A stretch of DNA of 64,000 bases from Bacillus subtilis subsp. subtilis str. 168 (GTDB lineage: Bacteria > Bacillota > Bacilli > Bacillales > Bacillaceae), in the NCBI RefSeq assembly GCF_000009045.1, contig NC_000964.3, positions 3,720,001-3,784,000 of the forward strand. Reading direction: 5' to 3'. A program made the translations under genes and the position numbers. Shown here piece after piece: positions 21,732 through 23,220 of this stretch. The stretch's first letter is position 1, and each line of letters opens with the position of its first letter. The notes beneath the pieces were generated by a model. It saw only the letters and a list, made by a program, of their open reading frames with translations, had not been told where the DNA came from and made no database searches.

Positions 21732-22121
21732 TTAATTTGTATGGCCAAAAGAATCAACCAATTCCCCTTTCACAACGAGGCGCCCTTCGGTTTTGACCGC
21801 CTTGTCACATGTGATTAACGTAATCTCCTTTTTGTTTGTCTCCTCAACTACATCTGCATCCATTTCCGATATGATGTCTTTCGATGTTACAGAATAGATA
21901 TAATCCTTTTTAAAATCCGTGATGACAATTTGGGCACCTGTTTTTATGTTTTCCAGAGGTCCGAACAGAAGATTCTTTTGCTTCAAATGATGGCCCGCCA
22001 ACGGATAATTTCCCTCACCCATTTTTTGATCCCGGCGCATTGTTGCCGCCCCTATCAAAAGATTTTCATTGGTTGTGCCTTTTACGATCGGAAGCTCCAG
22101 ATCGACACTTTTAATTGTTAT
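21732..22121 (-). pseudogene. ywpE: 5'-truncated sortase (catalytic His/Cys/Arg kept; no signal anchor, no proper start)
   Basis: NYPLAGHH, LITCD and GRLVV motifs. Sortase-like sequence ITIKSVDLELPIVKGTTNENLLIGAATM continues upstream of the first usable start codon. Confidence 0.8.
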
Positions 22122-22206
22122 CCGCCGCCTTGATTGTGAAGTAAAAATAAGTATATTTCACGTGCTTTCGACGTTCTCCACTTGACTGGAATGCTTTAAT
22201 GGCGAT

Positions 22207-22347
22207 CCCGGCATCTGTAGCTTCAGGCTTTCCTTCAGAGGAATCAGAAATCTCAAACTCTATTTTCTCAGTGTTCAGCACATAACCGGCTGGCGCTTTC
22301 GTTTCAACAAAAGCGTATTGTCCCGGTGCAAGGCCTGAAGCTGTGAC
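22207..22347 (-). pseudogene. Fragment of a SpaA/Cna-B-like repeat from a cell-wall-anchored surface protein
   Basis: Minus-strand VTASGLAPGQYAFVETKAPAGYVLNTEKIEFEI matches the GLxPGxYxxxETKAPxGY pattern; no start, no sorting signal. Confidence 0.75.
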
Positions 22348-23220
22348 TTGATGATGCCGGATATGACTGGTTTCGAAGTCTGTATGAAAATTCGCGAACG
22401 ATTCAGCATGGTTGATCTTCCGGTTCTGATCATTACAGCTGCCATTATCGGCCATGACAAATACAAGGCTTTTCATGCCGGAGCGAATGACATTTTGCAA
22501 AAACCCTATCATTACTCTGAATTTATGGCGCGTATTCAAAACCTGATAATGATGAAACATACAGCAAATCAAGCCACAAGAATGGAAATGGCGTTTCTCC
22601 AGTCGCAAATCAAGCCTCATTTTCTTTATAATGTATTAAACACGATTATTTCTCTCACTCATTTGGATATTGAAAAGGCCCGGGAGGTAACAGAGGAATT
22701 TACCAACTATTTAAGAATGAGTTTTGACTTTCAAAATACATCAGCCATCAGTTCCTTCAGACATGAGCTTTCGATTATCAATTCCTATCTTTCTATAGAA
22801 AAGACGCGATTCAGTAATCGGCTTGAGGTTCTTTTCGATATAGATGAAGACATTGACTTTATCCTTCCGCCTTTAATGATTCAGCCCTTGGTGGAAAATG
22901 CCGTTCTTCACGGTGTCAGCAAGAAAAGAGGCGGAGGATGGATCAAACTGACAGCTAAAAAACAAAGCAAAAATGAGTATCACATCAAAGTAGAGGATAA
23001 CGGTCCCGGGATAACTCCGGAAAAACAAATAGATCTCTTATCAACGGATTTTGATCGCAGCGTCGGATTGAAAAATATCAATCAGCGGCTGAAACATTTT
23101 TGCGGAAGCGAGTTGATGATCAGCAGCACTCCGGATGCAGGCACCTCTGTCTCAATGCTCATTCATCTCGCTGAAACAACAGGAAGCCCTAAAGAACTGA
23201 AGGACACAGAACGAACCTAA
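22345..23220 (+). pseudogene. ywpD: C-terminal remnant of a hybrid sensor kinase (partial receiver, LytS-type HisKA, HATPase_c)
   Basis: Begins at receiver DLMMPDMTGFEVC; then ITA and GANDILQKP; H-box QIKPHFLYNVLNTI, QPLVENAVLHG and EDNGPG. No RBS at the break. Confidence 0.8.

What the first reader, a model, noticed from the sequence alone, without database searches (positions are those of the whole stretch)
22111..23220. Collapsed adhesin, sortase and sensor-kinase locus with one breakpoint joining two divergent gene stumps
Seen: at about 22345-22350 a minus-strand SpaA/Cna-B-like repeat fragment (VTASGLAPGQYAFVETKAPAGYVLNTEKIEFEI) meets back to back with a plus-strand fragment that begins exactly at a receiver-domain phosphoacceptor motif (GAC TTG ATG ATG CCG = DLMMP). 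The plus fragment continues into a LytS-type kinase core. Neither stump has a promoter, RBS or N-terminus. The adhesin stump also lacks a sorting signal and runs into the truncated sortase, and no response regulator follows ywpD. Inference: the ancestor had a divergent arrangement, [hybrid kinase +/- regulator] versus [large repeat adhesin or pilin + dedicated sortase]. That is a two-component-controlled, sortase-anchored surface system, reduced by at least two deletions. The intact version in wild relatives would be the system to study.
Basis: partly seen in the sequence, partly recalled or inferred. Interest (0 to 1): 0.68.

Follow-up and report, generated by a model that had tools for sequence, protein, structure and literature searches.

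The report
Wreck of a sortase-adhesin-kinase island
The ywpE-ywpD interval of this Bacillus subtilis genome is the 1.5-kb wreck of an 11-kb gene island (sortase, giant collagen-binding wall adhesin, regulator and an unusual double sensor kinase) that is intact in sister species, which explains why YwpD is an orphan kinase and YwpE a headless sortase.

Summary
At 22345-22349 a minus-strand SpaA/Cna-B repeat fragment (Pfam E 2e-10) abuts a plus-strand fragment that starts at the receiver phosphoacceptor Asp and runs into a LytS-type kinase core.

The inference is supported. Eleven Bacillus species, seven of them at the same ywpF-mscL site, carry an intact four-gene module:
- a 212-aa SrtA-like sortase;
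- a ~1990-aa LPKTG adhesin (Big_8, Collagen_bind, SpaA repeats);
- a 358-aa REC-wHTH regulator;
- a divergent 1026-aa kinase (7TMR-DISM, HisKA-HATPase, REC, LytS-type His_kinase-HATPase).

About 9.9 kb is missing here.

Corrections:
- A 70-bp regulator-gene piece lies between the sortase and adhesin stumps.
- The four pieces are out of order (sortase, regulator, adhesin, kinase; intact order is sortase, adhesin, regulator, kinase).
- They are joined at three 2-5-nt microhomology junctions, so plain collinear deletions cannot explain the result.

Two environmental contigs 0.8-1.4% diverged from the window share all three junctions, so the wreck predates domestication.

Prior literature: the ywpE deletion (mBio 2021) and an intact sortase with Cna-type proteins in strain BSP1 (2013) are published. 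I found no report of the YwpD truncation, the lost regulator or the mosaic.

The double kinase and its regulator recur across Bacillota, often beside giant surface proteins.

The parts
21732..22126 (-). Piece A: sortase (ywpE) remnant. The whole catalytic domain is retained from RITIKSV (residue ~83 of the intact 212-aa enzyme) to the stop. The membrane anchor and linker codons 1-82 are gone, and the first usable starts (TTG 22058, ATG 22040) cut into the domain.
   Evidence: Pfam Sortase E 2e-20. Stop-to-stop frame 21732-22157. Collinear with the intact loci up to L022:2710 / L036:2118. Intact protein. LAGHH, TLITC and GRLVV motifs are readable.
22127..22194 (-). Piece B: about 70 bp from inside the response-regulator gene (codons ~152-175, wHTH domain; reads IPVKWRTSKAREIYLFLLHN). 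It is out of frame with both neighbouring pieces.
   Evidence: blastn 97% identity to B. stercoris L036:9292-9361, E 3e-28, and 91-93% to B. spizizenii. Three-frame translation compared with the intact regulator.
22195..22349 (-). Piece C: about 155 bp of one SpaA/Cna-B repeat plus linker from the LPXTG adhesin gene.
   Evidence: Pfam SpaA E 2e-10. blastn 85-90% identity to the best of three tandem ~282-bp repeats in the intact genes (L036:3872-4025, L022:4436-4588). Intact adhesin.
22345..23220 (+). Piece D: ywpD stub, equal to residues ~736-1026 of the 1026-aa double kinase. It holds the second half of the receiver (from the phosphoacceptor Asp codon), a complete LytS-type His_kinase domain and HATPase_c.
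   Evidence: Pfam. 90% amino-acid identity to the B. spizizenii kinase over residues 736-1024. 97% DNA identity to B. stercoris.
22124..22128 (.). Junction A/B (sortase codon ~82 joined to the regulator interior), with imperfect 2-5-nt microhomology (CC/GCC).
   Evidence: Parental alignments.
22193..22196 (.). Junction B/C (regulator piece joined to the adhesin repeat), with TT microhomology and one orphan base (C at 22194).
22345..22349 (.). Junction C/D (adhesin repeat joined to the kinase receiver), with 5-nt microhomology GACTT.
   Evidence: The junction is identical in two environmental contigs.
22111..22620 (-). Chimeric 169-codon ORF and not a gene: ywpD antisense, then the SpaA piece, then the out-of-frame regulator piece.

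Best explanation
Window 21732-23220 is the non-functional remnant of an ~11.3-kb four-gene island. In relatives the island encodes four things. (i) A class-A-like sortase with an N-terminal membrane anchor. (ii) A ~1990-aa wall-anchored adhesin with a signal peptide, Big_8, five Collagen_bind domains, at least eight SpaA/Cna-B repeats and an LPKTG sorting signal. (iii) A 358-aa response regulator with a LytR/BtsR-like receiver, an OmpR/SARP-type winged helix and a C-terminal extension. (iv) A divergent 1026-aa sensor kinase: 7TMR-DISM membrane sensor, HisKA-HATPase core, internal receiver, then a second LytS-type His_kinase-HATPase core. In this genome 10.1 kb of that interval is replaced by 218 bp. 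Four pieces remain: sortase C-part, 70 bp of the regulator, 155 bp of one adhesin repeat, and the kinase C-part. They are joined at three junctions with 2-5 nt of microhomology, and the two middle pieces are in the reverse of their original order. This points to illegitimate recombination with template switching, or to a duplication followed by deletions, rather than two clean deletions. The event happened once, in a wild ancestor of this B. subtilis lineage. Inferred working of the intact system: the 7TM sensor drives the first kinase core. That core phosphorylates the internal receiver. The receiver gates the second, LytS-type core. The second core phosphorylates the regulator, which turns on the adhesin-sortase operon. 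The sortase then links the adhesin to peptidoglycan at LPKTG. In this genome YwpD has lost its sensor, first core and half its receiver. YwpE has lost its anchor and start. The regulator and adhesin are gone. The two annotated genes are therefore relics.
For: Shown: domain hits on the stumps. The intact module and its domains in B. spizizenii. The same module and order in 11 named Bacillus species. The four-piece mosaic with B and C swapped, against all 11. Junction microhomologies. The three minus-strand fragments lie in three different frames. Among 49 species representatives of the genus, 16 have a (near) full-length kinase and only this genome has a stub. Two metagenome contigs, 98.6% and 99.2% identical to the window over 8-9 kb, carry all three junctions; one has a further 12-bp deletion in piece B. 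The sortase is closest to solved class A sortases, E 5e-37 to 9e-33. The regulator's receiver best matches BtsR/LytR, the partners of PF06580 kinases. The double kinase occurs full-length in 29 of 400 sampled Bacillota genomes. A homologue of the 358-aa regulator lies next to the kinase in 25 of 29 loci. Three of the four loci without one lack the second kinase core (matches end near residue 810), and the fourth is an N-terminally partial match. Literature: the 168 deletion in ywpE and its upstream gene (PMC8092201), intact YwpE with Cna-type proteins in BSP1 (PMC3569322), no ywpE transcript on Northern blot (PMC3222306), YwpD listed as a kinase with unknown regulator (bioRxiv 10.1101/2022.04.05.487122). 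Weak support for relaxed constraint: 168-lineage changes in the stub are 8 nonsynonymous to 5 synonymous, against 26 to 54 pooled over six intact lineages.
Against: The ywpD stub is still an open 290-codon frame in all three collapsed alleles. Its transcript is measurable in a published RNA-seq study. Its DHp His, N box and G boxes are readable. A residual activity as a soluble kinase is therefore not excluded. The substitution counts are too small to prove relaxed selection. The phosphorelay order inside the double kinase and the regulon of the regulator are inferred and not shown. No intact allele from B. subtilis sensu stricto could be fetched here, so the ancestral gene order is inferred from 11 other species, the nearest being B. 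stercoris at 97%. Single event versus several events cannot be decided from three identical collapsed alleles.
Confidence: 0.88

Rival explanations
1. The mosaic arose in one complex event: serial microhomology-mediated template switching during replication or repair. Copying left the sortase gene at codon ~82 and jumped 7.2 kb forward into the regulator gene for 70 nt. It then jumped 5.5 kb back into an adhesin repeat for 155 nt, then 8.2 kb forward into the kinase receiver.
For: There are three junctions, each with 2-5 nt of microhomology, and the two patches are short (70 and 155 nt) and locally templated with orientation kept. All three collapsed alleles available have all three junctions and no intermediates were seen.
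Against: Only three collapsed alleles were examined, all from one clade, so intermediates could simply be unsampled. The adhesin patch is only 85-90% identical to any repeat in the relatives, so its exact source copy is unknown.
Confidence: 0.45
2. The mosaic arose stepwise. A tandem duplication of the 5.5-kb adhesin-to-regulator segment created the regulator-to-adhesin joint. Two independent deletions followed, one from sortase to regulator copy 1 and one from adhesin copy 2 to kinase. Alternatively, a deletion was followed by a second illegitimate event using DNA from an intact donor taken up by competence.
For: The geometry fits exactly. Progressive decay of this island is seen elsewhere: the B. 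stercoris representative has the adhesin in three ORFs and a frameshifted kinase, and L042 has a later 12-bp deletion.
Against: It needs three independent rare events in one 10-kb locus, all fixed before the sampled lineages diverged by ~1.4%.
Confidence: 0.4
3. The stubs are not dead. YwpD is a soluble orphan kinase that has been kept for cross-talk with another regulator, and YwpE is a small cytoplasmic protein with a new role.
For: The frames are open in three diverged alleles. The kinase catalytic motifs are intact. The ywpD transcript changes in a transcriptome study. A low ywpE-lacZ activity has been reported.
Against: There is no sensor, no complete receiver, no adjacent partner and no convincing RBS. 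No ywpE transcript was seen on Northern blot. A sortase without its anchor and first strands cannot reach its substrate, and the only LPKTG substrate of this module is deleted. The nonsynonymous share is raised in the collapsed lineage. An 870-nt frame staying open at ~1% divergence is expected by chance.
Confidence: 0.1
4. This lineage never had the island. The pieces were imported as junk DNA into an empty ywpF-mscL site.
For: The island is mobile on an evolutionary scale. It sits in at least three chromosomal contexts. Some relatives have an empty site or other cargo, such as a 270-aa penicillin-binding/beta-lactamase-like gene.
Against: Pieces A and D are continuous with ywpF and mscL at exactly the island boundaries seen in seven relatives that carry it at this site. 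Their identity matches the flanks: 93-97% to B. stercoris.
Confidence: 0.04

Closest known systems
Published description of the ywpE deletion in strain 168 (Gago-Cordoba et al., mBio 2021, PMC8092201) and of the intact YwpE with Cna-type proteins in B. subtilis BSP1 (Genome Announc 2013, PMC3569322)
   Same: It is the same locus. The loss of the first 81-82 sortase codons and of the upstream adhesin gene, and the existence of an intact sortase-adhesin set in a wild strain, are already stated there.
   Different: Those papers do not mention that ywpD is a truncated 1026-aa kinase or that a regulator gene was lost. They also do not mention the regulator and adhesin fragments that survive, their swapped order, or the three microhomology junctions.
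Cna-type MSCRAMM collagen adhesins with a class A sortase (S. aureus Cna/SrtA; SrtA of Listeria and B. anthracis, PDB 5hu4, 2kw8)
   Same: The intact adhesin has Collagen_bind (PF05737), Cna-B/SpaA repeats, LPKTG, a hydrophobic stretch and a basic tail. The sortase is closest to solved class A enzymes.
   Different: The adhesin has five Collagen_bind domains and a dedicated adjacent sortase under its own two-component system, and it sits in a non-pathogenic soil/gut Bacillus. Collagen binding was not tested. In the window only 38 of 91 positions of one repeat remain.
B. subtilis YhcS-YhcR sortase-substrate pair
   Same: A sortase gene lies next to its wall-anchored substrate in the same species (PMC3222306).
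   Different: YhcS is class D with an LPDTS substrate. YwpE is class-A-like with an LPKTG substrate. A 2025 review groups both as class D (PMC12445088), which one search does not support.
LytS/LytR, BtsS/BtsR and YesM/YesN (PF06580 kinases)
   Same: The stub's DHp and catalytic core belong to PF06580 plus HATPase_c. The lost regulator's receiver best matches BtsR/LytR.
   Different: There is no 5TM-Lyt sensor. The PF06580 core is the second kinase in one polypeptide and sits behind an internal receiver. The regulator's output is a winged helix (Trans_reg_C), not LytTR or AraC.
Hybrid histidine kinases (TorS, ArcB, BarA, RpfC) with 7TMR-DISM sensors
   Same: The N-terminal 800 residues of the intact protein are 7TMR-DISM_7TM, HisKA, HATPase_c and REC, with the best NCBIfam partial hits to TorS and ArcB.
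   Different: No Hpt domain was found. A whole second kinase core follows the receiver instead.
SARP-type activators (wHTH plus BTAD, such as AfsR and EmbR)
   Same: The regulator has Trans_reg_C followed by a ~130-aa helical extension. The Lachnoclostridium homologue scores BTAD PF03704 at 30 bits.
   Different: It has an N-terminal receiver, and BTAD is not detected in the Bacillus protein itself.

Membership tests
Sortase (PF04203), class A | Sortase catalytic domain with His, TLxTC Cys and Arg | tested here: met
   Pfam E 2e-20 on the stub and 1e-25 on the intact protein. LAGHH, TLITC and GRLVV are readable.
Sortase (PF04203), class A | N-terminal membrane anchor and a usable start | tested here: not met
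   In the window, homology starts at residue ~83 with no in-frame start. The anchor MIITMFILLGLLLICSPFL is present only in the intact orthologue.
Sortase (PF04203), class A | Class assignment | tested here: inconclusive
   The closest solved chains are class A, E 5e-37 to 9e-33, against 1.5e-11 for class C and 2e-7 for a class D-type entry. The substrate motif is LPKTG. NCBIfam class C, D and E models all score below their cut-offs. No class A model appeared in that scan.
SpaA/Cna-B repeat (PF17802) | Match to the family profile above the gathering score | tested here: met
   41 bits against a 23.1 cut-off, but only profile positions 43-80 of 91, so it is a fragment.
LPXTG wall-anchored adhesin (MSCRAMM, Cna-like) | Signal peptide, ligand-binding A region, and an LPXTG sorting signal with hydrophobic and basic tail | tested here: not met
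   None of these is in the window. All are present in the intact 1987-aa orthologue: Big_8, Collagen_bind x5, and Gram_pos_anchor with LPKTG.
LPXTG wall-anchored adhesin (MSCRAMM, Cna-like) | Binds collagen | not testable with these tools
   Only domain homology (PF05737, E 6e-65) is available.
Response regulator receiver (PF00072) | Complete alpha/beta fold with acidic pocket and phosphoacceptor Asp | tested here: not met
   The stub covers profile positions 50-111 only. The Asp codon lies in the junction, upstream of any start codon.
LytS/YesM-type histidine kinase (PF06580 + HATPase_c) | DHp domain with the conserved His, plus the ATPase domain | tested here: met
   His_kinase 1-81/81, E 1e-21. 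HATPase_c E 8e-13. KPHFLYN, ENAVLHG and DNGPG are readable.
LytS/YesM-type histidine kinase (PF06580 + HATPase_c) | Membrane sensor domain and an adjacent cognate regulator | tested here: not met
   Both are absent in the window. In the intact form the sensor is 7TMR-DISM_7TM and sits two modules upstream, and the regulator is encoded divergently.
Hybrid histidine kinase | HisKA-HATPase_c followed by a receiver in one chain | tested here: met
   Met for the intact orthologue only: HisKA 429-496, HATPase_c 543-650, REC 690-801. No Hpt domain was detected.
SARP-like regulator (wHTH + BTAD) | Trans_reg_C plus BTAD | tested here: inconclusive
   Trans_reg_C scores 29.9 bits against a 26.2 cut-off. 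There is no BTAD hit in the Bacillus protein even at E 10. BTAD scores 30.2 bits against 22.1 in the Lachnoclostridium homologue, but BLASTP aligns only residues 3-231 between the two.

The most novel reading that the evidence does not exclude
The YwpD-type protein (7TMR-DISM sensor, HisKA kinase, receiver, then a second LytS-type kinase in one ~1030-aa chain) and its REC-wHTH partner form a widespread, uncharacterised signalling pair in Bacillota. Its conserved job would be to switch on a neighbouring giant cell-surface adhesin, whatever the anchoring chemistry: LPXTG and sortase in Bacillus, SLH domains in others. On this reading the 'orphan kinase' YwpD of the model strain is its dead remnant. 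The remnant itself would be a rare, cleanly readable bacterial example of a multi-jump, microhomology-mediated template-switch rearrangement.
Probability: 0.4. Interest if true: 0.6.

Novelty: new member of a known kind. Interest (0 to 1): 0.4.

Why it matters
YwpD and YwpE are still listed as an orphan sensor kinase with unknown regulator and as one of two sortases of the model Gram-positive bacterium. This analysis shows that both are relics, names the missing partner genes and says where intact copies can be studied. That removes two misleading entries from the B. subtilis two-component and sortase inventories. It corrects the sortase class from D to A-like. It also points to an unstudied double-kinase signalling architecture that seems tied to giant surface adhesins in many Bacillota. 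Finally, the out-of-order mosaic is a compact natural record of how illegitimate recombination destroys an island.

Tried and rejected
I could not pull other B. subtilis strains such as BSP1 to see an intact allele of the species itself or to look for intermediates.
- Fabret et al. 1999 (PMID 10094672, PMC93607) is not held. Its treatment of YwpD is cited only second-hand through the preprint.
- The promoter/terminator consensus scan was uninformative: 6 promoter-like sites against 3.1 +/- 1.8 in shuffles.
- BTAD could not be confirmed in the Bacillus regulator.
- Lineage-specific substitution counts lean towards relaxed constraint, but the numbers are too small to carry weight.
- The ESM Atlas look-up only confirmed that ~1010-1050-aa clusters with Response_reg, His_kinase, HATPase_c and HisKA exist in Bacillota. 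No structure search was available.
- The plain 'two collinear deletions' model was rejected because piece B (regulator) precedes piece C (adhesin), while all 11 intact loci have C before B.
- 'Domestication artefact of strain 168' was rejected because two environmental contigs 0.8-1.4% diverged from the window share the junctions.
- The big protein searches, structure prediction and complex prediction were not needed and were not run.
- My sortase-stub translation was out of frame and is disregarded.
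Full report
**What is in the window.**

The window is a Bacillus subtilis-type chromosome segment with the gene order glcR, ssbB, ywpF, ywpE, ywpD, mscL, fabZ, rapD.
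- The minus-strand peptide VTASGLAPGQYAFVETKAPAGYVLNTEKIEFEI matches SpaA/Cna-B (PF17802, positions 43-80 of 91, E 2e-10). It is the only SpaA match in the genome.
- The plus-strand frame reads SCDLMMPDM from 22339. It matches the second half of a receiver (PF00072, positions 50-111 of 111).
- A complete LytS-type His_kinase domain (PF06580) and HATPase_c follow.
- The sortase remnant matches PF04203. Its homology continues upstream of any start codon to 22126.

**The intact version exists.**

A DNA search of relatives showed that the two flanks of the finding lie about 10 kb apart in two close relatives. Those relatives were later named as B. spizizenii TU-B-10 and DV1-B-1.

The interval in TU-B-10 (L022) holds four genes.
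- A 212-aa sortase with an N-terminal hydrophobic anchor.
- A 1987-aa protein with Big_8, five Collagen_bind domains, at least eight SpaA repeats and an LPKTG anchor signal.
- A 358-aa regulator with a receiver, Trans_reg_C and a C-terminal extension. It is followed by its own hairpin terminator.
- A divergently transcribed 1026-aa kinase with 7TMR-DISM_7TM, HisKA, HATPase_c, Response_reg, His_kinase (PF06580) and a second HATPase_c.

The same four genes in the same order occur in 11 named Bacillus species. Seven of them carry the island between ywpF and mscL, as here. B. velezensis, swezeyi, glycinifermentans and sonorensis carry it in other chromosomal contexts.

Other relatives have a ywpF-mscL site without the island. 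At least one of them holds a 270-aa penicillin-binding/beta-lactamase-like gene there instead.

Among 49 species representatives of the genus:
- 16 have a full-length or near full-length kinase;
- 32 have none;
- only this genome has a stub.

**Anatomy of the wreck.**

blastn against the intact loci splits the window into four pieces.

| Piece | Window coordinates | Source in the intact island |
|---|---|---|
| A | up to 22126 | sortase from codon ~83 to the stop |
| B | ~22127-22194 | 70 bp from inside the regulator gene (97% to B. stercoris, E 3e-28) |
| C | ~22195-22349 | 155 bp of one adhesin SpaA repeat (85-90% to the best repeat copy) |
| D | from 22345 | kinase from the receiver Asp codon to the end (97% to B. 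stercoris) |

On the minus strand the three fragments A, B and C lie in three different reading frames.

In all 11 intact loci the order is A, C, B, D. Here it is A, B, C, D, with the orientation of every piece kept.

The junctions carry short microhomologies when aligned to the nearest relative.
- A/B: CC/GCC.
- B/C: TT plus one orphan base.
- C/D: GACTT at 22345-22349.

About 10.1 kb of ancestral sequence is replaced by 218 bp.

Two plain deletions cannot give this order. The possible routes are:
- one event with three template switches;
- a 5.5-kb tandem duplication followed by two deletions;
- a deletion followed by a patch copied from another intact copy.

I cannot separate these routes with the data at hand.

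**Age and spread.**

A pattern search of metagenome contigs found two long contigs, 98.6% and 99.2% identical to the window over 8-9 kb. Both carry all three junctions base for base, and one has an extra 12-bp deletion inside piece B.

The wreck is therefore inherited among diverged environmental B. subtilis lineages. It is not a product of laboratory domestication.

Substitutions in the ywpD stub lean towards relaxed constraint.
- On the 168 lineage there are 8 nonsynonymous and 5 synonymous changes.
- Pooled over six intact lineages the counts are 26 and 54.
- Among the collapsed alleles the counts are 11 and 14.

These counts are small, and the frame is still open in all three collapsed alleles.

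**What the intact system probably does.**

Shown:
- The sortase is most similar to solved class A sortases of Listeria and B. anthracis type (E 5e-37 to 9e-33). Class C and D entries score far lower.
- Its neighbour ends in LPKTG, the class A motif.
- The regulator's receiver best matches BtsR and LytR, the partners of PF06580 kinases.

The kinase-regulator pairing is conserved far beyond Bacillus.
- In an even sample of 400 Bacillota genomes, 29 carry a match to the double kinase. Most are full length (32-38% identity over residues ~5-1010) and several are partial.
- 25 of those 29 loci have a homologue of the 358-aa regulator immediately beside the kinase, usually covering its whole length.
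- Three of the four loci without one have matches that end near residue 810 and so lack the second kinase core. The fourth is an N-terminally partial match.

Inferred: the first core charges the internal receiver. The receiver gates the second core. The second core phosphorylates the regulator, which activates the adhesin-sortase operon.

**A wider pattern.**

I extended 13 of the distant loci and added a Lachnoclostridium locus, giving 14 loci. In eight of them, a very large surface protein lies next to the pair. These proteins range from 694 aa (cut by a contig end) to more than 2200 aa. They carry SLH anchors or Cadherin-like, Big_2, lectin, beta-helix, Glug/YDG or DUF11 domains.

The other six loci have unrelated neighbours: photolyase, a chemotaxis receptor, pyruvate formate-lyase and others.

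There was no matched control, and some genomes are related to one another. This is a lead, not a result. It does fit the Bacillus arrangement, where the cargo is an LPXTG adhesin with its own sortase.

**Comparison with the literature.**
- The loss of the first 81-82 codons of ywpE and of its upstream gene in strain 168 is stated in PMC8092201.
- The presence of a functional YwpE with Cna-type collagen-binding proteins in the gut isolate BSP1 is stated in PMC3569322.
- Nguyen et al. could not detect a ywpE transcript on Northern blot (PMC3222306).
- YwpD is still treated as a kinase whose regulator is unknown.
- In the searchable library I found nothing on the ywpD truncation, the lost regulator, the surviving fragments or their order.
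- A 2025 review calls YwpE a class D sortase. The comparison with solved structures does not support that.

**Limits.**
- I therefore have no intact allele from B. subtilis itself, no survey for intermediates and no read-level expression data.
- No alternative genetic code was used.

**Verdict.**

The finding is a well-resolved case of island decay in a model genome and is partly published.

The new content is threefold: an explanation for the orphan kinase YwpD, the out-of-order microhomology mosaic, and the pointer to an uncharacterised double-kinase family.

Noticed in passing
L025:1498-2310 (+) (G004, ywpF-mscL interval): In a relative that lacks the island, the same ywpF-mscL site holds a 270-aa secreted protein with an STFK motif. 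It matches Transpeptidase PF00905 (E 4e-40) and looks like a class D beta-lactamase. The site therefore carries alternative cargo.
   Followed up: partly
L036:2467-8179 (-) and L036:10001-13071 (+) (B. stercoris D7XPN1): In the nearest species representative the adhesin is split into three ORFs (599, 1145 and 193 aa). The kinase has a frameshift near residue 918 (LMIQP then out of frame). This is either independent decay of the island or draft-assembly errors.
   Followed up: partly
L028:1610-2145 (B. inaquosorum): The sortase region is only 77% identical to the window, while the flanking ywpF and the kinase-mscL side are 92%. This suggests recombination within the island between lineages.
   Followed up: no
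L042, aligned to window 22145-22156: One environmental collapsed allele has a further 12-bp deletion inside the regulator fragment, showing continued erosion after the collapse.
   Followed up: yes
L075-L086 and the table: Several Bacillota genomes (G169, G079, G363, G214, G086, G337) carry two paralogous full-length double kinases. In two large-genome relatives (L076, L086) a DNA photolyase gene follows the regulator instead of a surface protein.
   Followed up: no
window 21732-22126 / P0004: A recent review groups YwpE with YhcS as class D. By sequence the intact enzyme is far closer to solved class A sortases, and its neighbour carries LPKTG.
   Followed up: yes
L022:9240-9290 (-): A strong hairpin followed by a T-run lies right after the regulator gene, with ~230 bp before the adhesin start. 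The regulator and the adhesin-sortase genes therefore look like separate transcription units.
   Followed up: no
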